Below, piece after piece: positions 1 to 39,946 of a stretch of DNA of 64,000 bases (its first letter is position 1; the number at the start of each line of letters is the position of its first letter). The translations under genes were made by a program, and so were the position numbers. The DNA is from Leucoraja erinacea (lineage: Eukaryota), in contig NC_073381.1 in the NCBI RefSeq assembly GCF_028641065.1, forward strand, positions 57,350,001 to 57,414,000, given 5' to 3'. The notes under the pieces were generated by a model, which saw nothing but the letters and a program-made list of their open reading frames with translations, ran no database searches and was not told where the DNA came from.

Positions 1-779
1 CTTTCAGAATTATTCCTGGAGAGTTGTGGGTTTGCTGTTTGAATAAGCAGATAATAGAGAAAGGACTGTCAACTGAAAATCCTTAATTGACCACAATCAT
101 TCTAAACCACAAAGGAGTGGCAGGTCTAATAATCAAACAAAAGGTTACCAATGGAGAAGATAAATTTCCTGCAGCAAGTCACTCAGCTACAGACATCGCA
201 ATGCCTTTCTACCATCTACAAGACATAAGTCAGGAGTGGGATGGAATACACTCAACTTGCCTTGATGAGTAATTATAAAGAATTCCAATAATTTTTAAAG
301 TTATACACCTGATCTGGACACTGCCTGTAATCTTTGTTGCTTCCAATTATCCTATAACTGAGCAGGATTTAAAGAGCCCATAGTTATTCATAGGACAGAC
401 TACATGGGGATTACAAGTTTCCTCTCTTCAAGGACATCAGTGAACTAGTTTGGTTTTCCAACAAACTGATGGTAATTTTGTGAATTGGCATCTAAGTGAG
501 CTGCCCGCTAGCACACACCTCCAGCTTTAAGACACAGCAATTGTTTTCTGGCTTTGACCAATATGGCAAGTAGCCATGCACCATGATGAATGACTGGTGG
601 CTTCATGCTAAAAGCTCGGAATTCTAACCAAAAGCCGCCATGCTACTTGACGTCTATGTTCTTTAAAAGGATCATTAAAACCGAGTTAAACAAATTATTT
701 GGTTATTATCCTAGTATTTATTTTTGTGCCCTAATATCAGATTCTGTTAGATAATGATCTTTGGGATATTTTACTGTTA

Positions 780-930
780 AGGGCCTGACCCATTTACGAG
801 ATTTTTTGGTGACTTGCTGGCACCCGTCATAGTCGCAGCGGGCTGCTGAAAATTTTCAACATGTTGAAAAGCCCGCGGCGACCAGAAAAAGGTACGACTC
901 TTTAGGCGACTGCTGACCACCAAACATGTC
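780..930. mobile_element. Half copy of the Harbinger-type MITE found at 6526-6866
   Basis: gggcctgacccattt...ttttcaacatgttgaaaa...gcggcgaccagaa matches one arm of that element. Confidence 0.7.
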
Positions 931-934
931 AAAG

Positions 935-1040
935 CTCCGGACTGTCAAAGCTGCCACAGCCAGACATAAAAACAGTTTTATTTCCATGAGTAGTAGCTCT
1001 ACTCAATAACCAAAAGTCTCTAGCCTCCTTTTGCCAATAA
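935..1040 (+). mobile_element. Rex1/Babar-like LINE 3' fragment
   Basis: Degenerate R..K..T.RHKNSF..P....LLN-type C-terminal motif. Confidence 0.45.
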
Positions 1041-1179
1041 ACTTAAACTTATTCAACTTATTCAAGCCCATTTGCCCAGAAATTGTCATTGATATCAAAT
1101 TGAGAAGGACTTGAATATGTCAGACAATTAATTCTTACATGCATAATTTCTAAAGGTTTATCAGTCATTTCCTTTGCAG

Positions 1180-1230
1180 AAATTAAAAAAGAAAAGCAGA
1201 GAAAACCTTCAACCAAACCAGAGGAGAAAG
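1180..1230 (+). CDS. TRDN: 51-nt exon EIKKEKQRKPSTKPEEK
   Basis: tttcctttgcag|...AAAG|gtaatt. Confidence 0.75.
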
Positions 1231-1761
1231 GTAATTAGGTTTATTTTGCAAATGTGGAGAGAAAATTCCTAAATTTCAAGTTTATGAACAAATGGATCTG
1301 TTGGGCAGGTGAAGACCAGTTGCTGCATGAAGCCTGTCCTATACCTCTGTAAGATCAGATAATAACAACAAATTGCTTATTTTTTCTTTTTTTGATCAAC
1401 GTTCCTAAACTTTAATTCCCTCCACCACCCATTTTAATTTAGTTTATTGTCACGTAAACCAAGGTACAAAGAAAAGCTTTTGTTGCGTGCTGAGCATTCA
1501 GTGAAAAGACAATACATGATTACAATTGAGCAATCCAGTGTACAGATACATGATAAAGAGAATAACATAAATAATGTTAATGCAAGATAAAGTCGAGTAA
1601 AGTCCGATCAAAGACAGTTTGAGGGTCTCCTATGAACTAGACATAAAGGTACAACAATTTACCTATTTACGAACATGACGTTGAAAAGTCTCTGTGGCAG
1701 CAGCTTGGAGTCACTGCCACTATTGTTACAAATGTAAGCTCAACCCCCCCCCCACACTCCC

Positions 1762-1797
<36 letters not shown>

Positions 1798-4700
1798 ACC
1801 CCCCGCCAGTGATGTGATTGACACAGGGGTCTGGACCAATTGCTGACAAGCGCTCAGACAAATCCCGTCCCCGGAGACATCATGTCGGTTCGGTGGCTTT
1901 TCGACGCCATGTCCGTTCGGCGGCATTTCGACATCATGTCCGTTCTGCGTCTTGTCGTTTTGGCGCGGTGTCCATTCGGCTTCATATCCTTTTGGCCTAG
2001 TGTCCGGTCAGTATCTTTGCTTTAAGGCATGATGATCTTTCGACATCTTGGCTTCCACTTCTTGGCTTCGGCTTCTCGTCCTTTAACGTCCTGCCTGCAC
2101 ACGAGAGTTTCTATACATTCTCACTGCATAATTTAATATTTTTCAGTTATTTTCAATACATATTTGATTTTGTTCATGCCTATTTGCCTTGAAAATATAA
2201 TTGGTCAAATCAAGATGAATTTCAATATTGTTGGGCAAATAATTGTTTTATGTATAAGTTCAAAAATTTTACTGGCCATTTTCTTTGTAGAAATTAAAGA
2301 AGAAAAGCAGATAAAACCTTCAACCAAACCAAAGGAGAAAGGTAATTAAGTCTATTTTGCAAATGTGGACAGAAGATTCCTAAATTTCAAGTTTATGAAC
2401 AGGTGGAGCTGTTGGGCAGAAAAAGACCAGTTGCTAAATGAAGCCTGCCCTACACTGTGAGACCAGAATATCATAATACATTGCTTTTCTTTCTGGGCCA
2501 ACCAGCCAGCCATGTTTCCAGGAACCTGTGGAAAAAGAAGAGTTGCTTTGTATTCTACTTATTCCTCTGCTTATTTGGTTTAAATTTCTGGCTGCAGTTC
2601 CTCCTTAGTACATTAATTGGAATAATCTATCAATACAACTGTTATCATGGTCATTCAAGTCTGGCAACTTGCAGGAGAAATGTAGCAAGGACAACTCCTC
2701 AGCTATTCCATAGAGCTGCATTTTACCCCTCATCCTGATTCCAATTCCCTGTTCTTCGTCTGCTTGCATATGGCGTGCACAGCCTAAAGTTGTCGGACAA
2801 CTTGTTCTATTTGATCTTATTTGATTGCGCACGCCGGGTTGATTGCATTTGTCGAAACAGGGTGGACCACGTGAAGGTTGCAATCTCCCACCCCAATTCC
2901 TTGTTGAGAGCCTTGATTAAATCTGTCTCTACCACCTTGTCAGACAATGCATTCCCATATCCAAAATACTTTTGCTCCCAATAACCCTAATATCCTTAAA
3001 TGTTTGATCTTTGATACTTGACTTCCCACAATAGTAACAATACCTCTCTATCTATCTGACCAGACCCTCCTAAATTCTGAACAGCTTTATCATATGTTCT
3101 CCTATTCTCCAGACCAGCAAAACCAGTTTCTCAGACTTTCCCAAAAGTTTTTCATCACCAGAAACGTGCTCCTTGCCACTCCGCCCCACCCCAAATCTTC
3201 CATCGACTTAAGGTCATGGTGGCCAGATCTGGACACAACACTCGAGATGTATCGAGTATGGTGATTTACAAAGTTGAAGATTGCATATCTTCTTCATTTT
3301 TGCATTTCATGCCCCTGCTTGTGAAAGTCAGAATATTGTGGGTTTATAAAGTATAAAGTATTTCCTCTTTCTGTCCTGACACCTTTAAAATCTATCCACA
3401 AATGCACCCAAATCTCCACCTTCTTCAAGATATGTCAGAAGTGGGATGGAATACACTCCACTTGCTTTGATGGGTACTGTCAAGATGCTTGGAACCATCC
3501 AGAGCAAAGCAGCCTGTTACATTGGCATCTGTACAAAGTCCCTAAACTTTCATTCCCTCTACCTCTAATACATGGATTCTGTACATGAATGTAACCGTTT
3601 CTTTCCTCAAGGAAAAAGTGAAACAAAACTACAGTTATGTGAGGGGCCTTCACTCAAAACTACTTTCATTGCCCTGTACAAAAGGAATGAAACCCTTTAC
3701 AACGGATACTGTATATTTATACAAACACCGAAAGGTGTTCAATCCAGTTCAGGGGAAAAAAAGTCTTGTTAATGAAGTTCTTGGTCAGTTCTGGACTATG
3801 AGATGAAACCTCTCTACTGAACATTGCTTGGAAATAGATTCTGTCAGATAATGATCTCTGGGATATTTTGCTATTAGTGGTGCAATCTTCAAGTGCAAAT
3901 TATCTATATGGTTCAGAAAAATCTATGACAGGTTAGAGTTTCCACACATTCTCATTGCAATGTTTAATATTTTTGTATTTTGCTAATCATGTTTCACTTT
4001 TGTTCAGGCCTAATAGCCCTGAAAATGTCATTGATATCAAATTAAGAAGGTCTTCAATATATGTCAGACAAATAATTCTTACATGCAAAATTTCTGAAAG
4101 TTTACCATCCATTTTCTTTGCAGAAATTAAAGAAGAAAAGCAGAGAAAACCTGCAACCGATCCAAAGGAGAAAGGTAATTAGGTTTATTTTGCAAATGTG
4201 GATGGATGATGCCTAAATTTCATGTTTATAAACAGGTGGAGCTGTTGGGCAGAAAAAGACCAGCTGCTAAATGAAGCCTGCCCTACACTGTGAGACCAGA
4301 AAATAAATTGCTGCTTCTTTCTTGGCCAACCAGCCAGCCATGTGCCCAGGAACACATCGAAAAAGAAGAGTTGCTTCGTATTCCATTTATTCCTCTGCTT
4401 ATTTGATTTAGGTTTCTGGCTACAGTTCCTCCTTAGTACATTAACTAGAATCAATGGAACTGTTTTCATGGTCATTCAAGTCTGGCAACCTGCTAGAGAA
4501 ATGCAGCGAGTACAACACTGATCAATATTTTTCTATTTTGCTACTCGCGTTTCACATATTGTTCAAGCCTAATTGTGCTGAAAATGTAATTGATATCAAA
4601 ATACGAAGGACATTAATATTGTCAGACAAATAATTCTCACATGCCTAATTTCTAAAAGTTTATGAATTATTTTCTTTGTAGAAATCAAAATAGAAAAGCA

Positions 4701-7700
4701 GAGAAAACCTTCACTCAAACCAAAGGAGAAAGGTAATTAGGTTTATTTTGCAAATTTGTGTAGAAAATTCCTAATTTTCAAAGTTATGAACAAGTGGACT
4801 GGTTGGGCAGGAAAAGACTAGAAAGGCGGCCCTATCCTCAAGACCAAAAATTCATAATAAATTGCTTATTTTTTCTTGGCCAAACAGCCTGCTATGTGTC
4901 CAGGAACATGTGGACATAGAATAGTTGCTTCATATTCAATTTATTCCTCTGCTTATTTCGTTTAAGTTTTTGTATATAGTACCTCCTTAGTACATTGGGT
5001 CAGGTCGAGGGGAGTTCCCCCCACCACGGGTACCAAGTAATCCCGTGCTACCTGCTCCATGGTCGAATAGTCGGCGACTAAACCGTCTCCCCCACCTGGT
5101 TTGCCAGGTGAGGAGGGGGCTGTGGACCCAAAGCAGGACCAAAAATAAGACCTGTCAAAGGGCGGATGAGCTCCTAGTGAGCCAACGGCCATCCACACTT
5201 CAGTTGAAGTTGCGATCACTTGGTCCCCATTCATTAACTATTTGAGGGCATAGATTGGCCCAGCACGGAAACCCAACTGAAGCTTGAACTCAGGATTAGA
5301 TGACAAGTTATACTTTATAATCTGGGAACCTATCTCCAATGACGTATTATTAGTAATTCATTCCACTTTTTTTTCTTTATTGACTTTTGTAATTCTTTTT
5401 TTTCTTTCTCTCTCTTTCTATCTATATTTATTTAAAAAACTAAAGCGGAATCGATCTACAATTAAACATTTTAATAATGTATGATTGATGTACATGAAAA
5501 GTTTTTTACTATAACATGTAACTATACATTACCATAACATGTTTGCTTCTAATAAAAATATTAAAAAGAAAAAAAAAAAAAGTTGCGATCACTGTCGTAT
5601 ATAGCATTGTAAGGCACTGTGCCCATTGATGGTTTCAACAATGATGATGATGATGATGATGATGATGGTGTTAACTAGAATAATCCATCAATAGAACATT
5701 ATCATGGTCATTCAAGGGTGGCAACCTGCAGGAGAAACTCCTCAGCTATTCCATAGAATTACAGTTCACTTCCCTCAAATCCTGATTCCAAATCCCTTAT
5801 GAGAGCCTTGATTAAATCTGCATCTACCACCTTATCAGGCAATGCATTCCCATATCCCCACTCACTGTGTGAATAAAATACTTTTGCACGCATCACCTTT
5901 TCTCAAACCTTAAATTTGTGACCTTTGATTCTCTACCTTCCACTATGGGAAACATTTATTTCTATCTATGTTGTCCAGATCATCCTTTATTCTGAATAAA
6001 TATTCAAATCTCCCAATCTTCTGAACAGTAATATCGCTACCCCCAATTTTCCTGAAAGAATTGTAAGAAACCTAATTGCCCTGAAAATGACATTGATATC
6101 AAATTAAGATGTACTTTAATATTGTCCACACTTCAGTTGAAAATGCATTTCGTTGTCTCTGTACTGTACACTGACAATGACAATTAAAATTGAATCTGAA
6201 TCTGAATCTGAATTGTCAGACAAATAGTTCTTACATGTATATTTTCTATGGTTAACAACCATTTTCCTTGTAGAAATTAAGAAGGAGAGAAAACTTTCAA
6301 CCAAATTAAAGGAGAAAGGTAATTCATTTTTCTTGCACATATGGGTAGAAAAGTTCTGAATTTTAAGTTTATGAACAAGTGGAGCAGTTGGGCAGGAAAA
6401 TTACCAGCTGCCATTTAAAACCTGGCCTATACCGAGATAAGAATGTCAGAATAAAATGCTTCATTTTTCTTAGCCTACTGGCGAGCCATGTCTCCAGGAA
6501 CACATGGAAAAAGAAGAGTCGCTTATGGGCCTGTCCCACTTACGCAACTTTTATGGCGACTGTCGGCACCCGTCATAGGTAGTTGCAGGTCGCCGAAAAT
6601 TTGCAACATGTTGAAAATCTAGCGGCGACCAGAAAGACGCTATGACTCTTTGGGTGATTGAGGAGACTACTCACGACCATATAGGCGACACCCCGGCAAC
6701 ATGTCGCGGGGTGAAATCTGTATGGTCGTGAGTAGTTGTCCAAAGAGTCGTACCTTGTTCTGGTCACCGCTGGATTTTCAACATGTTGAACATTTTCTGC
6801 GACCTGCAACAACCTATGACGGGTGCCGGCAGTCGCCGAAAAAGTTGCGTAAGTGGGACAGGCCTATTAGAATTCCATTCATTCTCTGCTTATGAGGTCT
6901 TGGTTTCTGCTTACAGTTCCTCTTTAGTACCTTAACTAGAATAATCTATCAATAGATATTGTGGTCATTCAACTCTATGTTAGCAACCTGCAGGAGAAAT
7001 GCAACTAGTCCAAATCTGCAACTATTCTTGACCACTGAAGTTTACTTGTAATTGCAATTCCCTTATGAAGGCCTCAAACAAATATACCTCAACCACCTTG
7101 TCGGGCAATACATTCCTATATAGAAACATAGAAACATAGAAACATAGAAATTAGGTGCAGGAGCAGGCCATTCGGCCCTTCGAGCCTGCACCGCCATTCA
7201 ATATGATCATGGCTGATCATCCAACTCAGTATCCTGTACCTGCCTTCTCTCCATACCCCTTGATCCCCTTAGCCACAAGGGCCACATCTAACTCCCTCTT
7301 AAATATAGTCAATGAACTGGCCTTAACTACCCTCTGTGGCAGAGAGTTCCAGAGATTCACCACTCTCTGTGTGAAAAAAGTTCTTCTCATCTCGGTTTTA
7401 AAGGATTTCCCCCTTATCCTTAAGCTGTGACCCCTTGTCCTGGACTTCCCTAACATCGGGAACAATCTTCCTGCATCTAGCCTGTCAAACCCCTTAAGAA
7501 TTTTGTAAGTTTCTATAAGATCCCCTCTCAATCTTCTAAATTCTAGAGAGTATAAACCAAGTCTATCCAGTCTTTCTTCATAAGACAGTCCTGACATCCC
7601 AGGAATCAGTCTGGTGAATCGTCTCTGCACTCCCTCTATGGCAATAATGTCCTTCCTCAGATTTGGAGACCAAAACTGTACGCAATACTCCAGGTGTGGT

Positions 7701-10700: not shown

Positions 10701-13700
10701 ATATGGCAGGCAGAACATTTGTGTGTGCAGTTGTCATGCACCATGATGAATGCCTGGGGAACTCGTACTCTAAGCTCTGGTATTCTATACATAAGCCTGG
10801 ATGCCACTCAACCTCTATGTTCTTTAAAATTATAATTATTTATCCAAGTATTTATTTTTGTGTCTTGCTATCAGAATCTGTCAGATAATGATCTCTGAGA
10901 TATTTTACTGTTGTGGTGCAGTCTTCTAGTGCAACTTCTTCAGAACACTTTGAACTTTAGAGGTTAACTTTCTATACATTGCATTGTTTAATATTTTCAA
11001 TTTTGCTAATTGTGTTTCACTTTTGTTGAGGCCTAATAGCCCTGAAAATGTCAATGATATCAAATTAAGAAGGCTTTAATATTGTCAGACAAATAATTCT
11101 TGCATGCATAATTTCTAAAAGTTTACCAACCATTTTCTTTGCAGAAATTAAAATAGGAAAGCAGAGAAAACCTTCAACCAAACCAAAGGAGAAAGGTAAT
11201 TAGGTTTATTTTGCAATTGTGGATAGAAATGTCCTACATTTCAAGTTTATCAGCATGTGGAGCTGTTGGGCAGAAAAAGACCAATAGCTAAATGAAGCCT
11301 GCCCTACACTGTGAGAACAGAAAATCATAATAATTTGCTTCTTTTTTCTTGGCCAACCAGCTAGACATGTGTTCTGGAACACGTGGAAAAGGAACAGTTG
11401 CTTCAATTTCCACTTATTCCTCTGCTTATTAGGCTTAGGTTTCTGCTCACAGTTAGTCCTTAGTATATTAACTAGAAAAATCTCTCAGTGTAAGTATTAT
11501 CATGGTCATTCAACTCTATGTTAGCAATGTGCAGGAGAAATGCATCTAGTACAATATATTTTTCTATTTTGTTCATTATGTTTCACTTTTGTCCTGGACT
11601 TATTGCCCTGAAAAGGTAATTGATACCAAATTAAGATGGGCTTTAACATTGTCAGACAAATAATTCTCAATTGCGTAAAAGTATTATTATCATTTTCTTT
11701 GTAGAAATTAAGAAAGAAACACCGATAAAACGCTTAGCCGAACCAAAGGCAAAAGGTAATTGAGTTTATTTTGCAAATGTTGATAGACAATTACTGAATT
11801 TGGCAGAGAAGAGTTGTGCTGAATAGCCCAATACTGCTCCCAGAACTTATGAATTACAAGTTTATCAACAAGTGTTGATGGGTTGGAAAAGACCAGATGA
11901 GACATGAAGCCTGCCCTATACCAGGAGACCAGAACATCATAATATTTTTTTCGTGGCTAACCAGCCAGCCATGTGTCCAAGAAAACGTGGAAAAACAAGA
12001 GTAGCTTAGAATTCCATTAATTCCTCTGCTTACGTGTTTCTTGTACTGCTTACAGTTCCGCTTTAGTACATTGACTAGACTAATCTAGCAAAAGAACTGT
12101 TATCATGGTCATTCAAATATGTGTTAGCAGCCTGCATGAGAAATGCAACTAATCCAACTGCCTCTATTCTTGAGCACTGCAGAATACTGCATTAAAAGGT
12201 GACTCACCTCCTGACATCGCAAGACCTTTCCTCCATCTACAAGGTATGTCAGGAGTGTGATGGAAAACAATCCACTTGCCTTGATGAGTGCAGTCAAGAA
12301 GCTTGACATTATCCAGGAAAAAGCAGCTCGCTTTACTAGCTGAGACCTCTGAGTTACTCCAGCTTTTTATGTCTATCTTCGCTTTACTAGTATCTGATCA
12401 ACCTCTCAAAACATTAATTCCATCCACCACTGATTGCAAACTATTGGAATTGTGTATTGGTTTACTATTATCACATGCACCGAGAAACACTGAATAGTTT
12501 CAACGAAATTGCCCTGAAAAAGGTATTGATATCAAATTAAAATGGACTTTTAATGTTGTCAAATCATTGTCACACATATAATATCTAAATGTATATCAAC
12601 CATTTTCTTTTTAGAAATTAAAAAAGAAAAGCAGAAAAAACCTTCAATCAAACCAAAGGAGGAAGGTAAATGGGTTTATTATTATTATTAAAGAATATTC
12701 TTGAGCAGTGTAGGTTACTTCTCTCAGGTCCTGATTCCAATTCCCTTATGAAGGCCACGAAAAAAAACGACCTCCACCACTTCATCAAGCAATGCATTCC
12801 ATATCTAATCACTCACTGTGTGAATAAAACAAATTGTGCTCCCCTATTTTCTCAATTACCTTAAATTCTGCAGCTTTCCTGTAGATTTCCTACAGTTCCT
12901 GTAGATTTGTTGGTTTACCATTTGAATAAGCAAATAATGGAGATAGGACTAACAACAGAATATCCTAATATGTTTCTCTTTTCTTTAGACATAATTGCAT
13001 TGAAAATGTTATTGATATCAAATTAAGATGGACTTTTAATATTGACAGACAAATAATTGTCACATGCATAATATCTAAATGTTCACCAACCATTTTCTGT
13101 TTAGAAATTAAAAAAGAAAAGCTGAAAAAACCTTCAACCAAACCAAAGGAGAAAGGTAATTGGGTCTATTATGCAACTGTGGAACGAAAATTCCTAAATT
13201 TCAAGTTTATGAACAAGTGAAGATTATGTGTTGGAAAAAAACCAGCTGCTGCATGAAGCCTGCACTGTACCATAAAACCAGAACATCATAATATAATGCT
13301 CCTCATTCATGGCCAACCAGCCAGCCATGTGTCCAGGAACGCATGGAAAAAGAAGAGTTGCTTAGAATTCCATTCATTCCTCTGCTTACATGTTTATGGT
13401 TTCTGCTTACAGTTCCTCCTTAGTACATTAGCTAGAATAATCTAGCACAAGTACAATTATCATGATCATTTAAGTCTGTGTTTGCAGCCTGCATGAGAAA
13501 TGCAGCTAATCCAACTCGACAGCTATTCTTGAGCGCTGCTTTTCTCAGGTCTTGATTCCAATTTCCTTATGAAGGCCACAAACATATCTACATCTATCAC
13601 CTTGTCAAGCAATGCATTCCCATATCCAATCAGTCACTGTGTAAATAAAATACTTTTTCTCCCCTCTTTCTCATTTACCTTAAATTCTGTAGATTTCCTC

Positions 13701-19700: not shown

Positions 19701-22700
19701 TGTTAGCAATGTGCAGGAGAAATGCATCTAGTACAATATTTTTTTTTAATTTCGTTCATTACGTTTCACTTTTGTCCAGGACTTATTGCCCTGAAAATGT
19801 AATTGATACCACATTTAGATGGGCTTTAATATTGTCAGACAAATAATTCTTACATGCATAATTTCTAAAAGTATTATTACCATTTTTGTTGTAGAAATTA
19901 AGAAAGAAAAGCCGATAAAACCCTTAGCCGAACCAAAGGCAAAAGGTGATTAGGTTTATTTTGCAAATGTTGATAGACGATTTCTAAATTTGGCAGAGAA
20001 CAGTTGTTGTGCCGAATAGCCCAATACTGCTCCCAGAACTTATGAATTACAAGTTTATCAACAAGTGGAGTTGATGGGTTAGAAAAGACCAGATGAGACA
20101 TGAAGCCTGCCCTATACCAGGAGACTAGAACATCATCATAATATTTTTTCTTGGCTAACCAGCCAGCCTTGTGTCCAAGAACACATGGAAAAACTAGAGT
20201 AGCTTAGAATTCTATTCATTCCTCTGCTTACGTGGTCCTTGTTCTGCTTACAGTTCCTCTTTAGTACATTGACTAGAAAATTCTAGCAAAAGAACTGTTA
20301 TCATGGTTATTCAAATATGTGTTAGCAGCCTGCATGAGAAATGCAACTAATCCAACTCTGCAGCTATTCTTGAGCACTGCACAATAATGCATTAAAAGGT
20401 GACTCACCTCCTGACATCGCAAGACCTTTCCTCCATCTACAAGGTATGTCAGGAGTGTGATGGAAAACAATCCACTTGCCTTGATGAGTGCAGTCAAGAA
20501 GCTTGACATTATCCAGGAAAAAGCAGCTCGCTTTACTAGCTGAGACCTCTGAGTTACTCCAGCTTTTTATGTCTATCTTCGCTTTACAAGTACCTGATCA
20601 ACCTCTCAAAACATTCATTCCATCCACCACCGATTGCAAACTATTGGAATTGAGTATTGGTTTACTATTATCACATGCACCGAGAAACACTGAATAGATT
20701 TCCCTTTTGTTTCGACGAAATTGCCCTGAAAAAGGTATTGATATCAAATTAAGATGGACTTTTAATGTTGTCAGACAAATAATTGTCACATGTATAATTT
20801 CTAAATGTTTATCAACCATTTTCTTTTTAGAAATTAAAAAAGAAAAGCAGAAAAAACCTTCAATCAAACCAAAGGAGAAAGGTAAATGGATTTATTATTG
20901 AATAATTATTAATAAAGAATATTCCTTAATTTTAAGTTTATGAACAAATGGAGTTGGAAAAGATCAACTTCTACATGAACCATGAGGACAGAACATCATA
21001 TTAAAATGCTTATTTTTTCTTGGCTAACCAGCCAAACATGTGTCCAGGATCACATGGAATAAGAAGAGTTGCTTAGATTTCCATTCACTCCTCTGCATAC
21101 ATGGTTCTGGTTTCTGCTTACAGTTCTTTCTTAATACATTAACTAGCATAATCTAGCAAAAGAACAGTTATCACGGTCCATAAAATGTGTGTTAGCAGCC
21201 TGCTTGAGAAATGCAGCTAATCCAACTGCAACTATTCTTGAGCACTGCAGGTTACTTCTCTCGTGTCCTGATTCCCATTCCCTTATGAAGGCCACAAAAA
21301 AATCTACCACTTCATCACGCAATGCATTCCATATCTATTCACTCACTCTGTGAATAAATTACCTCGTATGTTCTCATTTACCTTAAATTCTGCAGATTTC
21401 CTGTAGATTTCCTACAGTTCCTGTAGATTTGTTGGTTTGCCATTTGAATAAGCAAATAATGGAGACAGGAATGTCAACAGAATATCCTAATATGTTTCCC
21501 TTTTCTTTAGACCTAATTGCCTTGAAAATGGTATTGATATCAAATGAAGATGGACTTTTAATATTCACAGACAAAAATTGTCACATGCATAATTTCTAAA
21601 TGTTCACCAACCATTTTCTGTTTAGAAATTAGAAAAGAAAAGCTGAAAAAACCTTCAACCAAACCAAAGGAGAAAGGTAATTGGGTCTATTATGCAACTA
21701 TGGATCGAAAATTCCTAAATGTCAAGTTTATGAACAATTGAAGATTAAGGCTTGGAAAAAAACAGCTGCTGCAGGCTACTTCTCTCATGTCCTGATTCCC
21801 ATTCCCTTATGAAGGCCACGAAAAAATCTACCTCTACTACTTCATCAAGCAATGCATTCCATATCTAATCATTCACTGTGTGAATAAAATACCTCGTATT
21901 TTCTCATTTACCTTAAATGAGAAATGCAGCTAATCCAACTCGACAGCTATTCTTGAGCGCTGCTTTTCTCCGGTCTTGATTCCAATTCCCTTATGAAGCC
22001 CACAAACATATCTACATCTATCACCTTATCAAGCAATGCATTCCCATATTCAATCACTCACTGTGTGAATAAAATACTTTTGCTCCCCTCCTTCTCATTT
22101 ACCTTAAATTCTGTAGATTTCTTCAGTTCCTGTAGATTTGTTAGTTTGCCATTTGAATAAGCAAGTAATGGAGATAGGACTGTCAACTGAATATACTTTA
22201 TTGAAGGCATTCAGTCGAACCCAAAATGGAGTGCCAGGTACAATAGTGCATCAAAAGGTGACTCACTTCCTGGCATTGCAAGGTATTTCTTCCATCTACA
22301 AGGCATACGTCAGGAGTGTGATGAAAAACACTCCACGTGCCTTGATGAGTACAATCAAGAAGCTTGGCACTATCCAGGATAAAGCAGCTCGCTTTAGTAG
22401 CTGAGACCCATTGAGTTACTGCAGCTTTTTGGGTCTATCTTCGCTTTACAAGTATCATATCAACCTCCCGAAACATTAATTCCATCCACCATCGATTGTT
22501 TAGACCATATTCCCCTGATAATGGTATTGATATCAAATTAAGATAGAGTTTTAATATTGTCAGACAAATATTTGTCATATGTATAATTTCTAACCTTTTT
22601 CTTTTTAGCAATTAAAAAAGAAAAGCAGAAAAAACCTTCAATCAAGCAAAAGGAGAAAGGTAATTGGGCTTATTATTGAATTATGGAAAGAATATTCCCA

Positions 22701-25700
22701 AATTTTAAGTTTATGAACAAATGGTTGATGTGTTGGAAAATACTAGTTTCTACATGAAGCCTGCCCTATTCCATGAGACCAGAACATCATAATAAAATGC
22801 TTCTTTTTCTTGGCTGACCAGCCAGCCATGTGTGCAGCAACACATGGAATAAGAAGAGTTGTTTAGGGAATTCCATTCACTCCTCTGTTTATACGGTTCT
22901 GGTTTCTGCTTACAGTTCTTTCTTAGTACATTAATTAGCACAATCTAGCAAGAGAACAGTTATCATGGTCATTCAAATGTGTGTTAGCAGCCTGCTTGAG
23001 AAATGTAGCTAATCCAACTCTGCAACTAATCTTGAGCACTGCAGGTTACTTCTCTCACGTCCTGATTCCAATTCCCTTATGAAGGCCACAAAAAATTCTA
23101 CCTCTACCACTTCATCAAGCAATGCATCAAGTAATCACTCACTGTGTGAATAAAATACTTTTGCTCCCCTCACATTTTCTCATTTACCTTAAATTCTGCA
23201 GCTTTCCTGTAGATTTCCTACAGTTCCTGTAGATTTGTTAGTTTGCCATTTGAATAAGCAAATAATGGAGACAGGACTGTCAACAGAACATCCTAATATG
23301 TTTCCCTTTCCTTTAGACCTAATTGACTTGAAAATGGTATTGATATCAAATTAAGATGGACTTTTAATATTGCCAGACGAACAGTTCTCACGTGCAAATT
23401 TTCGAAATGTTTACCAACCATTTTCTTTTTAGAAATTCAAAAAGAAAAGAAGAAAAAACCTTCAACCAAACCAAAGGAGAAAGGTAATTGGATTTATTAT
23501 GGAATTGTGGAAAGAATATTCCTAAATTTTAAGTTTATGAACAAGTGCACTTGATGGGTTGGAAAATACCAGCGGCAGCACGAAGCCTGCCCTATACCAT
23601 GAGACCGAAACATCATAATAAAATGTGTCTTTTTTCTTGGCTGACCTGTAGATTTGTTAGTTTGCCATTTGAATAAGCAAATAATGGAGATAGGACTTTT
23701 AACTGAATATCCTTTATTGAAGGCATTCACTCAAACCCCAAAAGGAGTGCCAGGTGCAATAGTGCATCAAAAGATGAAGACTCACTGTGTTACTCCAGTT
23801 TTTTGTGTCTATCTTCGCTTTACTGATCAACTACCCGAAACATTAATTCCATCCACCACCGATTGCAAAGTCATAGAATTGAGTATTGGTTTATTATTGT
23901 CACATGCTCTGAGAAACACTGAATATGGTTCCCTTTTGTTTAGAACAAATTGCCATGAAAATGGTACTGATATCAAATTAAGATGGACTTTTAATATTGT
24001 CAGACTAATAATTGTCAAATGCATGATATCTAACCATTTTCATTTTAGAAATTGAAAAAGAAAAGGAGAAAAAACCTTCAATCAAACCAAAGGAGAAAGG
24101 TATTCGGGTTTATTATTGAATTGTGGAAAGAATATTCCCAAATGTTAAGTTTCCGAACAAATGGTGCTGATGAGTTGAAAAAGACTAGCTTCTACATGAA
24201 ACCTGCCCTATTCCATGAGACCAGAACATCATAATAAAATGCTTCTTTGTTCTTGGCCAGCCAGTCAGTCATGTGTCCAGGAACACATGGAAAAAGAAGA
24301 GTTGCTCAGAATTCCATGAATTCCTCTGCTTACGTGGTTCTGGTTCTGCTTACAGTTCCTCCTTAGTACATTAACTAAATTAATCTAGCAAATTAACTGT
24401 TATCATGGTCATTCCAGTCTGTGTTAGCATGAGAAACATCGCTAATACAACTCCGCAGGTATTTATGAGCACTGCGGGCTTACTAATCTCAGGTCCTGAT
24501 TCCAATTCCCTTATGAAATTGAAAAAGAAAAGCAGAAAAAACCTTCAATCAAACCAAAGGAGAAACGTAAATGGGTTTATTATTGAATAATTATTATTAA
24601 AGAATATTTCTTAATTTTAAGTTTATGAACAAATTGATGGATTGGAAAAGATCAACTTCTACATGAACCACGAGAACAAAACATCATATTAAAATGCTTC
24701 ATTTTTTCGTGGCTAACCAGCCAAACGTGTGTCCAGGATCACATGGAATAAGAAGAGTTGCTTAGAATTCCATTCACTTCTCTGCTTACATGGTTCTCGT
24801 TTCTGCTTACAGTTCTTTCTTAGTACATTAACTAGCATAATCTAGCAAAAGAACAATTATCATGGGCCATCAAATGTGTGTTAGCAGCCTGCTTGAGAAA
24901 TGCAGCTAATCCAACTCTGCAACTATTCTTGAGCACTGCAGGTTACTTCTCTCATGTCCTGATTCCCGTTCCCTTATGAAGGCCACGAAAAAATCTACCA
25001 CTACCACTTCATCAAGCAATGCATTCCATATCTAATTACTCACTGTGAATAAAATAACTTGTATTTTCTCATTTACCTTAAATTCTGCAGCTTTCCTGTA
25101 GATTTCCTTCAGTTCCTGGAGATTTGTTGGTTAGCCATTTGAATAAGCAAATAATGGAGATAGGAATGTCAACAGAATATCCTAATATGTTTCCCTTTTC
25201 TTTAGACCTAATTACCTAGAAAATGGTATTGATATCAGATTAAGATGGACTTTTAATATTGACAGAAAAATAAATGTCACATGCATAATTTCTAAATGTT
25301 CACCAACTATTTTCTGTTTAGAAATTAAAAAAGAAAAGCAGAAAAAACCTTCAACCAAACCAAAGGAGAAAGGTAATTGGGTCTATTATGCAACTGTGGA
25401 ACGAAAATTACTAAGATTTAAGTTTATGAACAAGTGAAGATTATGTGTTGGAAAATACCAGCTGCTGCACGAAGCCTGCACTACACCATAATACCAGAAC
25501 ATCATAATATAATGCTTCTCATTCATGGCCAACCAGCCAGCCATGTGTCCAGGAACGCATGGAAAAAGAAGAGTTGCTTAGAATTCCATTCATTCCTCTG
25601 CTTACATGTTTATAGTTTCTGCTTACAGTTCCTCCTTAGTACATTAGCTAGAATAATCTAGCACAAGTACAGTTATCATGGTCATTCAAGTCTGTGTTTG

Positions 25701-28700
25701 TAGCTTGCATGAGAAATGCAGCTAATCCAACTCGACAGCTATTCTTGCGCGCTGCTTTTCTCAGGTCTTGATTCCAATTTCCTTATGAAGGCCACAAACA
25801 TATCTTTGTCTATTACCTTGTCAAGCAATGCATTCCCATATCCAATCACTAACTGTGTGAATAAAATTATTTTGTTCCCCTCTTTCTCATTTACCTTAAA
25901 TTTTCAAGATTTCTTCAGTTCCTGGAGATTTGTTAGTTTGTAAATAAGCAAATAATGGATAGGACTGTCAATTGAATATCCTTTATTGAAGGCATTCACT
26001 CGAACCCAAAATGGAGTGCCAGGTACAATAGTGCATCAAAAAGTGACTCACCTCCTGGCATTGCAAAGTCTTTCTTCCATCTACAAGGCATAAGTCAGGA
26101 GTGTGATGGAAAACACTACACGTGCCTTGATGAGTGCAGTCAAAAAGCTTGGCACTATCCAGGACAAAGCAGCTCGCTTTAGTAGCTGAGACCCGTTGAG
26201 TTACACCAGCTTTTTGGGTCTATCTTCGCTTTACAAGTATCATATCAACCTCCCGAAACATTCATTTCATCCACCATCAATTGCAAAGTAATCAAATTGA
26301 GTATTGCTTTATTATTGTCACATGCACCGAAACACTGAATATGTTTCCCTTTTGTTTAGACCAAATTCCCCTGAAAATGGTATTGATATGAAATTAAGAT
26401 GGACTTTTAATATTGTCAGACAAATATTTGTCATATGTATAATTTCTAACCTTTATCTTTTTAGAAATTAAAAAGGAAAAGCAGAAAAAAACTTCAATCA
26501 AACCAAAGGAGAAAGGCAATTGGGCGTATTATTGAATTATGGAAAGAATATTCCCAAATCTATCAACAAATGGTTGATGTGTTGCCAAATACTAGCTTCT
26601 ACATGAAGCCTGCCCTATTCCATGAGACCAGAACATCATAATAAAATGCTTCTTTTCTTGGCTGACCAGCCAACCATGTGTGCAGGAACTCATGGAATAA
26701 GAAGAGTTTTTTAGAATTCCATTCACTCCTCTGCTTACATGGTTCTGGTTTCTGCTAACAGTTTTTTCTTAGTACATTAATTAGCACAATCTAGCAAGAG
26801 AACAGTTATCATGGTCATTCAAATGTGTGTTAGCAGCCTGCTTGAGAAATGTAGCTAATCCAATTTTGCAACTAATCTTGAGCACTGCAGGTTACTTCTC
26901 TCATGTCCTGATTCCAATTCCCTTATAAAGGCCACGAAAAATTCTACCTCTATCACTTCATCAAGCAATGCATCAAGTAATCACTCACTGTGTGAATAAA
27001 ATACTTTTGCTCCCCTCACATTTTCTCATTTACCTTAAATTCTGCTGCTTTCCTGTAGATTTCCTACAGTCACTGTAGATTTGTTAGTTTGCCATTTGAA
27101 TAAGCAAATAATGGAGACAGGACTGTCAACAGAACATCCTAATATGTTTCCCTTTCCTTTAGACCTAATTGACTTGAAAATGGTATTGATATCAAATTAA
27201 GATGGACTTTTAATATTGTCAGACGAACAGTTCTCACGTGAAAATTTTCGAAATGTTTACCAACCATTTTCTTTTTAGAAATTCAAAAAGAAAAGAAGAA
27301 AAAACCTTCAACCAAACCAAAGGAGAAAGGTAATTGGGTTTATTATGGAATTGTGGAAAGAATATTCCTAAATTTTAAGTTTATGAACAAGTGTACTTGA
27401 TGGGTTGGAAAATACCAGCGGCAGCACGAAGCCTGCCCTATACCATGAGACAGAAACATCATAATAAAATGCGTCTTTTTTCTTGGCTGACCTGTAGATT
27501 TGTTAGTTTGCCATTTGAATAAGCAAATAATGGAGATAGGACTGTTAACTGAATATCCTTTATTGAAGGCATTCACTCAAACCCCAAAAGGAGTGCCAGG
27601 TGCAATAGTGCATCAAAATGTGAAGACTCGCTGTGTTACTCCAGTTTTTTGTGTCTATCTTCGCTTTACTGATCAACTACCTGAAACATTAATTCCATCC
27701 ACCACCGATTGCAAAGTCATAGAATTGAGTATTGGCTTATTATTGTCACATGCTCTGAGAAACACTGAGTATGGTTCCCTTTTGTTTAGAACAAATTGCC
27801 ATGAAAATGGTATTGATATCAAATTAAGATGGTCTTTTAATATTGTCAGAGTAATAATTGTCAAATGCATGATTTCTAACCATTTTCATTTTAGAAATTG
27901 AAAAAGAAAAGGCGAAAAAACCTTCAATCAAACCAAAGGAGAAAGGTATTCGGGTTTATTATTGAATTGTGGAAAGAATATTCCCAAATGTTAAGTTTCT
28001 GAACAAATGGTGCTGATGAGTTGAAAAAGACTAGCTTCTACATGAAACCTGCCCTATTCCATGAGACCAGAACATCATAATAAAATGCTTTTATTATATA
28101 ATAAAACCATAATAAAATTCTTCTTTGTTCTTGGCCAGCCAGTCAGTCATGTGTCCAGGAACACATGGGAAAAGAAGAGTTGCTCAGAATTCCATGAATT
28201 CCTCTGCTTACGTTGTTCTGGTTCTGCTTATAGTTCCTCCTTAGTACATTAACTAAATTAATCTAGAAAAATAACTGTCATCATGGTCATTCCAGTCTGT
28301 GTTAGCAGCCTGCATGAGAAACATCGCTAATACAACTCCGCAGGTATTCTTGAGCACTGCCGGCTTACTACTCTCAGGTCCTGATTCCAATTCCCTTATG
28401 GCCACAATCAAATCTACCGCTACTGTCTTGTCGAGCAATGCATTCCCATATCTAATCATTCACTGTGTGAATAAAATACCTTTGCTCCCCTCACTTTTTT
28501 TCACTTACCTTATATTCTGTAACTTTCCTACAGTTTCTGTAGATTTGTTAGTTTGCTATTTGAATAAACAAATAATGGAGATAGGACCGTCAACTGAAAA
28601 TCTTTATTGAAGTAATTCACTCACACCCAAAAAGGAGTGCCAGGTACAATAGTGCATCAAAAGGTGACCCGACTCCTGACATCGCAATGTCTCTCCTCCA

Positions 28701-31700
28701 TCTACAAGGCATAAGTCAGGAGTGTGATGGAAAGCAATCCACTTGCTTTGATGGGTGTCATCAAGAGGCTTGGCACTATCCAGGACAAAGCAGCTCGCTT
28801 TTCTAGCTGAGACCCGTTGAGTTACTCCAACTTTTTGTGTCTATCTTCGCTTTACTATCAACCTCCCAAAACATTCATTCCTTCCACCACCGTTAGCAAA
28901 CTAATGGAATTGAGTATTGGCTTATTATTGTCACATGCACCGAGAAACACGGAATAGGTTTCCCTTTTGTTCAGACCTTATTGCCCTGAAAATGGTATTG
29001 ATATCAAATTAAGATGGACTTTTAATGGTGTCAGACAAATAATTGTCACAGTATAATTTCTAAATGTTTATCAACCATTTTCTTTTTAGAAATTAAAAAA
29101 GAAAAGCAGAAAAAACCTTCAGCCAAACCAAAGGAGAAAGGTAATTGAGTTTATTGTGGAGTTGTGGAAAGAATATTCCTAAATTTTAAGTTTATGACCA
29201 AGTGTAGTTAATGGGTTGGAAAAGACTACACAAAGCCTGCCCTAAACCTTGAGTCTAGAACATCATGATAACATTCTTATTTTTTTCTTGCCCAACCAGC
29301 TGACATGTGTCCAGGAACACATGGAAAAAGGGGAGTTCCTTAGAAATCCATTCATTCCTCTGCTTATGTGGTTCTGATTTCTGCTTACAGTGCCTCCTTA
29401 GTGCATTAACTAGGATAATCTAGCAAAGTAACTATTAACATGGTCATTCAAATGTGTGTTAGCAGCCTGCATGAGAAATGCAACAAATCCAAATCCACAG
29501 GTACTCTTGAGCGCTGCAGTTTACATCTCTCAGGCCCTGATTCCAATTCCCTTATGAAGGCCCCAAACAAATCTATCTCTACCACCTTATCATGCAATGC
29601 ATATCACCTTATCACCTTATTGCACCTTATCAGCAATATTCAATCACTCAATGTGTGAATACAATACTTTTGTTCCCCTCAATTTTTCTCATTTACCTTA
29701 AATTTTGTAGCTTTCCTGTAGATTTCCTGCAGAACCTGTAGATTTGTTAGTTCACCATTTGAATAAGCAAATAATGGAGATAGGACTGTCAACAGAATAT
29801 CCGAATATGTTTCCTTTTTGTTTAGGCCTAATTGTCCTGAAAATGGTATTTATATAAAATTAAGATGGACTTTTAATATTGTCAGACAAATAATTGTCAC
29901 GTGCATAATTTCTAAATGTTCACCAACCATTTTCTTTTCAGGAATTAAAAAAGAAAAGCTGAAAAAACCTTCAATCAAACCAAAGGAGAAAGGTAATTGA
30001 GTTTATTATGCAATTATGTAAAGAATATTCCTAAATTTCAAATGAACAAATTAAGTTGATGAGTTGGAAAAATACCAGCTGCAACACGAAGCCTGCCCTA
30101 TACCATGAGACTAGAACATCATAATAAAATGCTTCTTTGTTCTTGGCCAACCAGCCAGCCATGTGTTCAGGAATGCATGGAAAAAGAAGAGTTTTGTAAA
30201 ATTTCCATTTACTCTATGCAGGTAGAGTTTAAAGAGTTAGGAAAGGACAAAAACATGCTTTTAATATAAAAGGATTTCAAATATTTTAATGATTTTAAGA
30301 ATGATTCACTATGCCAGTATTTATTGTCACTCCTGAATTATCCAAGATCTGAGCAGGATTTAAAGAGCCTCAAATTATTCAGAGGACAGGTTTCCTTTCC
30401 TAATGGACATCATTGAACAAGATGGCATTTACATCAAGGTCATGGTAATGTCTTACCTACCAAGATTATTCATTTAGTTCCAGATTTGAACTTTTATTTC
30501 CCAATCAACACTGTTACTTAAGCGAACTGCTGCGTGACCATACACCTTTAGCCCAAAAGCTGTTGTTGACACAGGCTCCAGACCTTTCGTTTTCCAGCAT
30601 TGACCAATATGGCAGGCAGTGTATTTGCAATGTCCTGTTACCATGCACCATGAAAAATGCTTGGAAAATTTATGCTGTAAAGTCTACAATTTGTTTCCTA
30701 AGTCTCCAAGCCTCTCTGACAGGTTAGAGTTTCTGTAAATTCTAATTGCACAATTTAAGATTTTTTGAATGTATTAATATGTATTTGCTTTTGTTCTGGC
30801 TCAAATTCCCTGAAAAATACGAATTGAGATGGTCTTTAATATTGTCGAATAAATGTTATATTCATGATTTCTAAAACTTTACCAACCATTTTGTTTGTAA
30901 AATTGAAAAACAAAAACAGTGGAGAAACCAAAGGAAAAACGTGATTAGGCATATTATATGGTTGTGGAAAACATTTCTCAGTTTCAACTTCATGAATATG
31001 TGGAGTTGATGGGCAGGAAACGACCAGCTGCTACATGAAGTCAGCCTTATACCATGAGATCAGAGCATCATAATGATATGTTTCGCTCTTGCCCCATAAT
31101 GTAGACTGATGCACACTGAATGCAAAATTTGAGGATTGGTTATTAGGTTAATATTGTCACATGTACTGAGATACAGTGAAAAATGTTGTGCACATAGAAA
31201 CCTAGAAACAGTTGTGCACATAGAAACATAGAAAATAGGTGCAGGAGTAAGCCACCTTCACAGCCATTCGATATGATCATGGCAGATCATCCAACTCAGT
31301 ATCCCATCCCTGCCTTCTTTCCATACCCCCTGATCCCTTTAGCCACAAGGGCCACATCGAACTCCCTCTTAAATATAGCCAATGAACTGGCCTCAACTAC
31401 CTTCTGTGGCAGAGAATTCCATAGATTCACCACTCTCTATGTAAAAAATGATTTTCTCATCTCGGTCCTAAAAGACTTCCCTCTTATCTTTAAACTGTGA
31501 CCCCTAGTTCTGGACTTCCCCGACATCGGGAATAATCTTCCTGCATCTAGCCTGTCCAACCCCTTAAGAATTTTGTAAGTTTCTATAAGATGCCCCCTCA
31601 ATCTACTAAATTCTAGCGTGTACAAGCCGAGTCTATCCAGTCTTTCTTCATATGAAAGTCCTGCCATCCCAGGAATCAGTCTGGTGAACCTTCTCTGTAC

Positions 31701-39870: not shown

Positions 39871-39946
<76 letters not shown>

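What the first reader, a model, noticed from the sequence alone, without database searches (positions are those of the whole stretch)
1180..30940. Hidden array of 29 tandemly amplified 51-nt symmetric coding exons (triadin-like gene)
Seen: what looks like a degenerate satellite is an exon+intron unit. Each copy carries Y-tract-AG | 51 nt | GTAATT, phase 1-1, with no stops. 25 copies are canonical, 1 has a GC donor and 3 are broken. Spliced together, the canonical copies give about 423 aa of EIKKEKQKKPSxKPKEK repeats (net about +5 per 17 aa). Because all copies are symmetric, any subset stays in frame. Known: triadin's luminal Lys/Glu-rich (KEKE) region binds acidic calsequestrin and the ryanodine receptor, and mammalian triadin has no such homogeneous array. 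Inference: a lineage-specific, length-tunable polybasic tether, set by exon copy number and alternative splicing, that could alter SR Ca2+ release coupling in muscle (or in electric organ if this is a skate).
Basis: partly seen in the sequence, partly recalled or inferred. Interest (0 to 1): 0.9.

Follow-up and report, generated by a model that had tools for sequence, protein, structure and literature searches.

The report
Tandem array of lysine-rich microexons
A skate genome segment carries at least 29 head-to-tail copies of a 51-base exon-like unit, each able to add 17 lysine- and glutamate-rich residues to a protein, but which gene it belongs to and whether the copies are spliced into RNA are still unproven.

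Summary
An nhmmer profile finds 29 copies, all on the + strand, between 1180 and 30940.

Among the 26 units with intact splice sites the exon has one distinct indel, which is in frame. Equal-sized flanking windows have 6-16. Constraint on the amino acids themselves is weak: 10 synonymous and 30 non-synonymous variants.

The array grew by duplication of blocks of several units, now 92-96% identical, and it continues upstream of the window.

Expression is not shown. Four RNA runs of unknown tissue gave no listed junction and only a few sense-oriented reads on exon bins. No protein in a library of 1.84 billion matched the repeat.

This stretch was noted before in this scan (s1-910756).

Verdict: probably real cassette exons of an unidentified Lys/Glu-rich protein gene.

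The parts
13..270 (+). Intronic part of an array unit at the window's start; the array continues upstream of the window
   Evidence: blastn of 1-1180 against the window: 13-149 and 176-270 match inter-exon stretches of 9 or more units at 77-85%
1180..1230 (+). Exon-like copy 1, AG|51|GTAATT, EIKKEKQRKPSTKPEEK
2291..2341 (+). Copy 2, AG|51|GTAATT
4124..4174 (+). Copy 3, AG|51|GTAATT
4682..4732 (+). Copy 4, AG|51|GTAATT
6274..6318 (+). Copy 5, AG|45|GTAATT, in-frame 6-nt deletion (15 aa)
11145..11195 (+). Copy 6, AG|51|GTAATT; follows a 4.9-kb interval filled by inserted repeats
11705..11755 (+). Copy 7, divergent type C (EIKKETPIKRLAEPKAK)
12615..12665 (+). Copy 8, type A, donor GTAAAT
13105..13155 (+). 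Copy 9, type B
14236..14286 (+). Copy 10, type D, CTAAC branch-point-like motif upstream
15341..15391 (+). Copy 11, type C, donor destroyed (GA, 1-nt deletion); exon body intact
16272..16322 (+). Copy 12, type A
17494..17544 (+). Copy 13, type C
18426..18476 (+). Copy 14, type A
19236..19286 (+). Copy 15, type B, equals the consensus peptide EIKKEKQKKPSTKPKEK
19895..19945 (+). Copy 16, type C, donor GTGATT
20831..20881 (+). Copy 17, type A
21626..21676 (+). Copy 18, type B
22609..22659 (+). Copy 19, type D
23433..23483 (+). Copy 20, type E (EIQKEKKKK...)
24049..24099 (+). Copy 21, type F, donor GTATTC
24516..24566 (+). Copy 22, acceptor lost (TG), last base C. Homology to its paralogues starts at 24511, 5 nt before the exon, so this is a duplication junction
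25322..25372 (+). Copy 23, type B, consensus peptide
26465..26515 (+). Copy 24, type D, GC donor
27279..27329 (+). Copy 25, type E, exon identical to copy 20
27895..27945 (+). Copy 26, type F
29090..29140 (+). Copy 27
29942..29992 (+). Copy 28, last intact copy
30900..30940 (+). Copy 29, degenerate remnant: no AG, 10-nt deletion, ends in C
22496..28090 (+). Youngest block duplication: 22496-24244 matches 26352-28090 at 96.3% over 1.75 kb, offset 3856
14952..21737 (+). Block duplications with periods of 2.15-2.4 kb: 14952-16344 matches 17105-18498 at 95.1%; 16929-19346 matches 19332-21737 at 93.3%

Best explanation
The stretch is a tandemly amplified array of cassette exons in a protein-coding gene on the + strand. 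Each unit has a pyrimidine tract, an AG, a purine-rich 51-nt exon and a GTAAKT-type donor. Every intron falls after the first base of a codon (phase 1-1), so any subset of copies stays in frame. Each exon adds 17 residues of a Lys/Glu/Pro-rich segment that is probably disordered and carries about +4 net charge.

The array grew by unequal crossing-over of blocks of two to five units. One such junction removed the acceptor of copy 24516.

Shown: the anatomy, the open frame, the kept length and the block duplications. Inferred: that the copies are spliced into mRNA and translated.

The gene is not identified. I put a triadin-like or junctin-like sarcoplasmic-reticulum protein at about 0.3, another Lys/Glu-rich protein at about 0.35, and the rest on the rivals below.
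For: - 29 copies lie on one strand and none on the other.
- 25 have AG...GT and one has AG...GC.
- 12-16 of the 18 bases upstream are pyrimidines, against a background mean of 9.4.
- Length is kept. Among the 26 units with intact splice sites the exon window has 1 distinct indel (6 nt, in frame); seven flanking windows of 51 columns have 6-16.
- In six block-duplicate pairs there are 0 indels in 714 exon sites and 48 in 8809 intron sites, Fisher P 0.048.
- The exon is the least variable window: mean pairwise difference 0.119 against 0.157-0.371, and 42 distinct substitution variants against 55-92.
- The one copy with a frame-breaking indel in the exon (30900-30940) has also lost its AG.
- In RNA runs X9 and X10 the only depth outside two repeat fragments lies in or just beside bins that hold exons. 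All of it has the first mate on the - strand, as expected for + strand RNA in a stranded library.
Against: - No junction was listed in four RNA runs. Exon bins are empty in X6 and X13, and the bins of exons 27895 and 29090 are empty in all four runs. No indexed run on record as RNA holds the stretch.
- Amino-acid constraint is weak. Distinct variants are 10 synonymous and 30 non-synonymous, against 29 of 153 possible synonymous changes. The absence of stop-making variants has P of only 0.08.
- Between block duplicates, exon and intron substitution rates do not differ significantly: 3.6% against 5.0%, P 0.105.
- A profile of the 25 single exons found no protein with E up to 0.001 among 1.84 billion representatives. 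One exon-only peptide already scores 23-33 bits, which is E 0.002-3 at that library size. A protein with two or more copies should therefore have been seen, unless HMMER's composition filter removed it.
- Pfam, the protein Atlas and an 83-aa read-through query were all blank.
Confidence: 0.65

Rival explanations
1. Pseudo-exon array. One ancestral exon was duplicated together with its introns. Most copies are rarely or never included in mRNA and drift nearly neutrally; they look intact only because the duplications are young.
For: The ratio of non-synonymous to synonymous variants is close to neutral. Exon and intron substitution rates in block pairs do not differ significantly. No junction was listed. 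No matching protein was found. Three copies are already broken.
Against: Flanking windows collected 6-16 distinct indels over the same time, while the exon collected one, and that one is in frame. The oldest units differ by about 20% yet keep 51 nt, AG and GT.
Confidence: 0.18
2. Non-coding exons of a repeated host transcript, as in the tandem snoRNA host-gene clusters (SNORD116/115 type; recalled, not from a call). In those clusters each unit has a short exon and the functional RNA lies in the intron.
For: Copy number and unit size resemble such clusters. Some intron bins are almost as conserved as the exon, 0.84-0.86 against 0.80-0.93.
Against: Rfam release 15 gave no match up to E = 1 in 1-31000 on either strand. 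No intronic 51-column window is as free of indels as the exon. A non-coding exon would have no reason to keep its length to a multiple of three or one frame open in 27 of 27 copies.
Confidence: 0.05
3. The gene is titin, and the array is a skate version of its PEVK spring region, which is built from short, repetitive, block-duplicated exons.
For: P+E+V+K+A makes up 0.59-0.82 of each exon, above the 0.54 cut-off of PEVK_Finder. PEVK-C exons are short (mean 76 nt), repetitive and show duplicated or triplicated blocks (PMC6469411, passages).
Against: None of the 28 exon peptides translated contains valine, and lysine is 41% of the 25 canonical ones. The unit is 17 aa, not the roughly 28-aa PEVK unit (that figure is recalled). 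The 33 kb downstream holds no + strand open stretch with an Ig-type motif and no further charged symmetric exon. The elephant-shark titin gene packs 300 exons into 238 kb (PMC12241362, abstract).
Confidence: 0.05
4. Plain macrosatellite or transposon-derived repeat whose exon-like look is accidental.
For: Head-to-tail units with variable spacers and many transposon insertions nearby.
Against: All copies lie in one local array on one strand. Conservation peaks on the 51-nt segment, which is bounded exactly by AG and GT. The exon segments are nearly uncovered in RNA runs, whereas real repeat fragments at 27629-27650 and 28811-28854 draw hundreds of reads.
Confidence: 0.03

Closest known systems
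Titin PEVK exon arrays (PMC6469411, passages seen)
   Same: Both have many short, repetitive, charged, proline-containing exons. Both show block duplications or triplications. Both are known to be missed by standard gene predictors. Both allow length to be tuned by exon choice.
   Different: The exon is 51 nt, against a mean of 76-93 nt. Composition is lysine-dominated with no valine. No Ig exons lie nearby. The copies are far more uniform.
Triadin luminal Lys/Glu-rich (KEKE) region (PMC3363337, passages seen)
   Same: Both are basic, Lys/Glu-rich sequence. TRDN is a gene of many exons (41 in human) that yields several isoforms by alternative splicing. The KEKE region is the contact site for RyR2 and CSQ2.
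   Different: The human KEKE motif is one short stretch (residues 210-224), not a 25-fold repeat. No transmembrane exon, synteny or sequence homology could be checked here. Each skate exon contains prolines.
Junctin / aspartyl beta-hydroxylase locus (recalled; only its citation was seen in the reference list of PMC3363337)
   Same: It is a paralogous sarcoplasmic-reticulum protein with a charged luminal tail, encoded by small exons.
   Different: Nothing in the window links the array to this locus; not tested.
Symmetric-exon repeat genes such as tropoelastin and fibrillar collagens (recalled, no call)
   Same: All exons share one phase, so cassettes can be added or skipped without breaking the frame.
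   Different: Their composition is different (Gly/Val/Pro/Ala), and their arrays are ancient rather than young and homogeneous.

Membership tests
Triadin (TRDN) | N-terminal cytoplasmic segment followed by a single transmembrane helix | not testable with these tools
   The array starts at or before the first base of the window, so no upstream exon is available.
Triadin (TRDN) | Detectable sequence homology to triadin proteins | tested here: inconclusive
   Searches were exon by exon only. Pfam gave nothing relevant on 6 read-through translations. The profile of 25 exons had 0 hits. The Atlas gave no usable hit. The joined spliced model was not searched.
Triadin (TRDN) | Long basic Lys/Glu-rich luminal domain | tested here: met
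   K 41%, E 19%, net +103 over the 423 aa summed from 25 exons. That the segment is luminal is not testable.
Triadin (TRDN) | Expression in skeletal and cardiac muscle | not testable with these tools
   Run and tissue names were coded. The four runs laid gave almost no reads on exons.
Triadin (TRDN) | Conserved gene neighbourhood | not testable with these tools
   The rest of the window holds transposon ORFs only (RVT_1, GIY-YIG). No scan note in this genome names such genes.
KEKE motif (criteria of Realini et al. 1994, recalled: 12 or more residues, over 60% Lys+Glu/Asp, no Pro/Trp/Tyr/Phe) | A proline-free Lys/Glu-rich run of at least 12 residues | tested here: inconclusive
   Within the consensus exon the longest proline-free run is its first 9 residues. 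The criterion would be met only across a splice junction, by the last three residues of one exon plus the first nine of the next. That presupposes splicing.
Titin PEVK region | Exons with P+E+V+K(+A) at 0.54 or more, of at least 12 (the paper's minimum exon length), with paired splice sites (PEVK_Finder criteria, PMC6469411) | tested here: met
   The ratio is 0.59-0.82 in 28 of 28 copies. This is a filter meant for use inside TTN, not a test of the gene's identity.
Titin PEVK region | Flanked by immunoglobulin-domain exons at short spacing | tested here: not met
   No + strand open stretch of 70 aa or more with an Ig-type motif anywhere in the window, including 31-64 kb. The upstream side is not testable.
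Spliced cassette exons (any gene) | RNA reads that join consecutive units | tested here: inconclusive
   No joint reached the listing threshold of 3 reads. The depth in X9 (0.16, 0.25 and 0.26 over 200-nt bins, i.e. about 32, 50 and 52 nt on the bins of exons 24049, 25322 and 26465) is what one 150-nt read split over three intact exons would give, but this cannot be verified.
snoRNA host-gene array | A conserved small RNA in each intron | tested here: not met
   No Rfam match up to E = 1. Every intronic window has more indels than the exon.

The most novel reading that the evidence does not exclude
A skate-lineage gene for a muscle or sarcoplasmic-reticulum protein (triadin-like) has amplified one 51-nt symmetric exon to at least 26 usable copies, and these are absent from predicted proteomes. 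The length of a polybasic, disordered Lys/Glu/Pro tether, up to about 440 residues and more than +100 net charge, would then be set by germline copy number (through unequal crossing-over) and by exon choice in each tissue.
Probability: 0.25. Interest if true: 0.65.

Novelty: new variant of a known kind. Interest (0 to 1): 0.45.

Why it matters
If the copies are spliced, this is one of the most uniform and numerous microexon arrays described in a vertebrate. It would also be a second example, beside titin PEVK, of a charged disordered segment whose length is set by cassette-exon number.

Such a locus would be a natural system for three questions: how exon definition works on dozens of near-identical 51-nt exons, how unequal crossing-over changes protein length within a population, and (if the gene is triadin-like) how tether length affects calcium-release coupling.

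It also matters for annotation. Arrays of this kind are routinely missed by gene predictors (PMC6469411, passages), and no library protein matched this one.

Tried and rejected
- Tandem Repeats Finder did not report the array, because the units exceed its 500-nt period limit.
- The stop-avoidance test gave only P 0.08, so I do not lean on it.
- The synonymous/non-synonymous count gave no signal of residue-level constraint.
- Comparing exon and intron substitution rates in six block pairs was not significant.
- The profile search of 1.84 billion representatives gave 0 hits.
- An 83-aa read-through query in the word-indexed library found 1 candidate and none scored. That tool sees only proteins of 46-145 aa for this query.
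- The protein Atlas gave no usable hit.
- Pfam on six read-through translations gave only chance-level hits: VEG, Crinkler and DUF5820, all E above 0.05.
- Rfam gave nothing.
- A scan for further Lys/Glu-rich or charged symmetric exons in 31-64 kb and 30-1150 found none, apart from one segment inside a LINE ORF and one 45-nt chance candidate.
- Pfam on ten downstream ORFs found only RVT_1 and a weak GIY-YIG match.
- Literature searches: 'triadin' + 'skate' found 3 papers, 'triadin' + 'shark' found 4, and 'triadin' + 'exon duplication' found 3. In the listings (titles and abstract openings), none appears to deal with such an array. One search added nothing. I therefore know of no printed description, within that library only.
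- Scan notes: no note in this genome mentions triadin, junctin, calsequestrin, ASPH, CLVS2 or NKAIN2.
- Supplements were not requested. The supplementary exon tables of PMC6469411 and PMC12241362 might bear on the comparison of exon length and phase with PEVK.
- That the genome is little skate comes from earlier scan notes. I did not check it; run organisms were coded.
Full report
**What is there.** Reading 1-6000 shows the unit directly: a pyrimidine tract, AG, a 51-nt purine-rich segment, then GTAATT. A fuzzy match to the first copy found 28 places on the + strand and none on the - strand. An nhmmer profile built from 27 copies with 40-nt flanks found 29, all on the + strand, from 1141 to 30973. 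Tandem Repeats Finder did not report the array because the period exceeds its limit. There are no N in the window.

**Borders and frame.**
- 24 copies are AG | 51 nt | GT.
- One copy (6274-6318) is AG | 45 nt | GT, with an in-frame 6-nt deletion.
- One copy (26465) has a GC donor.
- Three copies are broken. Copy 15341 has lost its donor to a 1-nt deletion. Copy 24516 has TG for AG and ends in C. Copy 30900-30940 lacks AG and has a 10-nt deletion.

The 18 bases before the acceptor hold 12-16 pyrimidines, against a mean of 9.4 for 1485 other AGs in the array. With the intron after the first base of a codon, the frame is open in 27 of 27 51-nt copies. The other two frames have stops in 10 and 24 of 27. 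The 25 AG...GT copies sum to 423 aa: K 41%, E 19%, P 11%, I 9.5%, net charge +103.

**Is it more than chance or recent ancestry?** I aligned all 29 units with 250-nt flanks.
- The exon is the most conserved part, with mean pairwise identity 0.80-0.93 per 10-nt bin. The flanks are also similar, mostly 0.68-0.86 from about 140 nt upstream to 220 nt downstream of the exon.
- The clearest signal is length. Among the 26 units with intact splice sites, the exon window has one distinct indel, and it is in frame. Seven flanking windows of 51 columns have 6-16.
- Counted per sequence over all 29 units, the figures are 2 against 9-27.
- In six block-duplicate pairs there are 0 indels in 714 exon sites and 48 in 8809 intron sites, P 0.048.
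- Substitutions are fewer in the exon (42 distinct variants against 55-92). In the block pairs the difference is not significant: 3.6% against 5.0%, P 0.105.
- At the residue level there is no clear constraint. Of 40 distinct variants, 10 are synonymous and 30 non-synonymous. The absence of stop-making variants (2.25 expected) has P 0.08.

So the frame and length look selected, and the exact residues hardly so. This fits a low-complexity charged segment, but it leaves room for a young, largely neutral array.

**How the array grew.** Self-comparison shows direct repeats of blocks of several units:
- 22496-24244 matches 26352-28090 at 96.3%.
- 14952-16344 matches 17105-18498 at 95.1%.
- 16929-19346 matches 19332-21737 at 93.3%.
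- Further pairs run at 81-93%.

By exon type the order after the first six units reads C A B D | C A | C A B | C A B D E F | A* B D E F | two more copies | remnant. The homology of copy 24516 to its paralogues begins at 24511, five bases before the exon. Its lost acceptor is therefore the scar of a duplication junction. The first 270 bases of the window match the intronic part of the units, so the array is cut by the window start and 29 is a lower bound.

**Expression.** No indexed run on record as RNA holds the stretch. Three runs of unknown kind hold 0.33-0.37 of its words. Twelve raw-read RNA runs came in by species label, with tissues coded. I laid 24000-29999 on X6, X9, X10 and X13, read at 5-25% of each run.
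- Of the 171, 221, 419 and 279 reads laid, nearly all sit on two short repeat fragments (27629-27650 and 28811-28854), with loose ends on both sides.
- No joint was listed; the threshold is three reads.
- Bins that hold exons have depth only in X9 (0.16, 0.25 and 0.26 for the bins of exons 24049, 25322 and 26465) and in X10 (1.57, 0.46, 0.46 and 0.25 for the bins of 25322, 26465, 27279 and 29942, plus 0.46 in the intron bin after 25322).
- All of these reads have the first mate on the - strand.
- The bins of 24516 (broken), 27895 and 29090 are empty in all runs, and X6 and X13 are empty on all exon bins.
- The X9 figures equal about 32, 50 and 52 nt. One 150-nt read split over three intact exons, skipping the broken one, would give this. 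I cannot verify it.

The test is inconclusive.

**Which gene?**
- The window offers nothing diagnostic. Downstream, 31-64 kb holds reverse-transcriptase and GIY-YIG transposon ORFs. It has no further Lys/Glu-rich or charged symmetric exon and no Ig-type open stretch.
- A profile of 25 single-exon translations found nothing with E up to 0.001 among 1.84 billion representatives. In a local control, one exon-only peptide scores 23-33 bits, E 0.002-3 at that library size. A protein with two or more copies should therefore have surfaced, unless the composition filter removed it. I could not test this without a joined sequence.
- An 83-aa read-through query, the Atlas and Pfam were blank.
- Triadin is a gene of 41 exons giving several isoforms, with a KEKE region that contacts RyR2 and CSQ2 (PMC3363337, passages). 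Composition fits, but nothing more could be checked.
- The exons also pass the compositional filter used for titin PEVK exons (PMC6469411, passages). However, they contain no valine, and no Ig exons follow within 33 kb, whereas a cartilaginous-fish titin gene is compact at 300 exons in 238 kb (PMC12241362, abstract and passages).
- Rfam gave no match, which, with the indel pattern, argues against a snoRNA-host-type array.

**Comparison with what is known, and novelty.** The array works like the titin PEVK region. Short symmetric exons that encode charged, proline-containing, probably disordered sequence were multiplied by block duplication and can be combined freely. It differs in exon size, composition and uniformity. 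Membership in the triadin family is untested, not failed. Literature searches for triadin with skate, shark or exon duplication turned up nothing that, by title and abstract opening, deals with such an array. This covers the held library only.

**Verdict.**
- Observation: confirmed.
- Interpretation: partly supported.
- Best reading: real cassette exons of an unidentified Lys/Glu-rich protein gene (0.65). Within this, a triadin-like identity stands at about 0.3.
- Main rival: a young, mostly unused pseudo-exon array (0.18).
- Novelty: new variant of a known kind.
- Interest: 0.45.

Noticed in passing
window 1744-1804 and 39873-39946: Two long poly-C tracts: 61 nt at 81% matches, and 74 nt that is perfect.
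   Followed up: no
window 6523-6864, partial copy at 777-926: A palindromic, MITE-like element. 777-903 matches 6523-6651 directly, and 782-926 matches 6864-6719 in reverse. It is inserted in the intron after copy 5.
   Followed up: partly
window 27629-27650 and 28811-28854: Short fragments covered by hundreds of reads in all four RNA runs, in both orientations, with consistent loose ends on both sides. They are pieces of an abundant expressed interspersed repeat, not part of the exon array.
   Followed up: partly
window 33844-35292 (+), 49991-51343 (-), 57147-57914 (+): Transposon ORFs. A 378-aa open stretch looks like a reverse transcriptase by eye. The ORF at 49991-50974 matches RVT_1 (E 1.6e-11). 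A 256-aa ORF has a weak GIY-YIG match (E 0.0011), as in Penelope-like elements (that comparison is recalled).
   Followed up: partly
window 7100-10020 and 31180-32460: Two copies of the same interspersed element, both starting with ATAGAAAC-type short repeats. One interrupts the array between copies 5 and 6; the other follows the last remnant.
   Followed up: no
window 62029-62157: A perfect two-copy tandem repeat of 63 nt.
   Followed up: no
window 12969-13217, 25186-25434, 17418-17699: The exon frame stays open for 83-94 codons through the intron flanks of some units, despite about 36% GC. Other units have stops within 5-7 codons, so this is not conserved and is probably shared ancestry plus chance.
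   Followed up: partly
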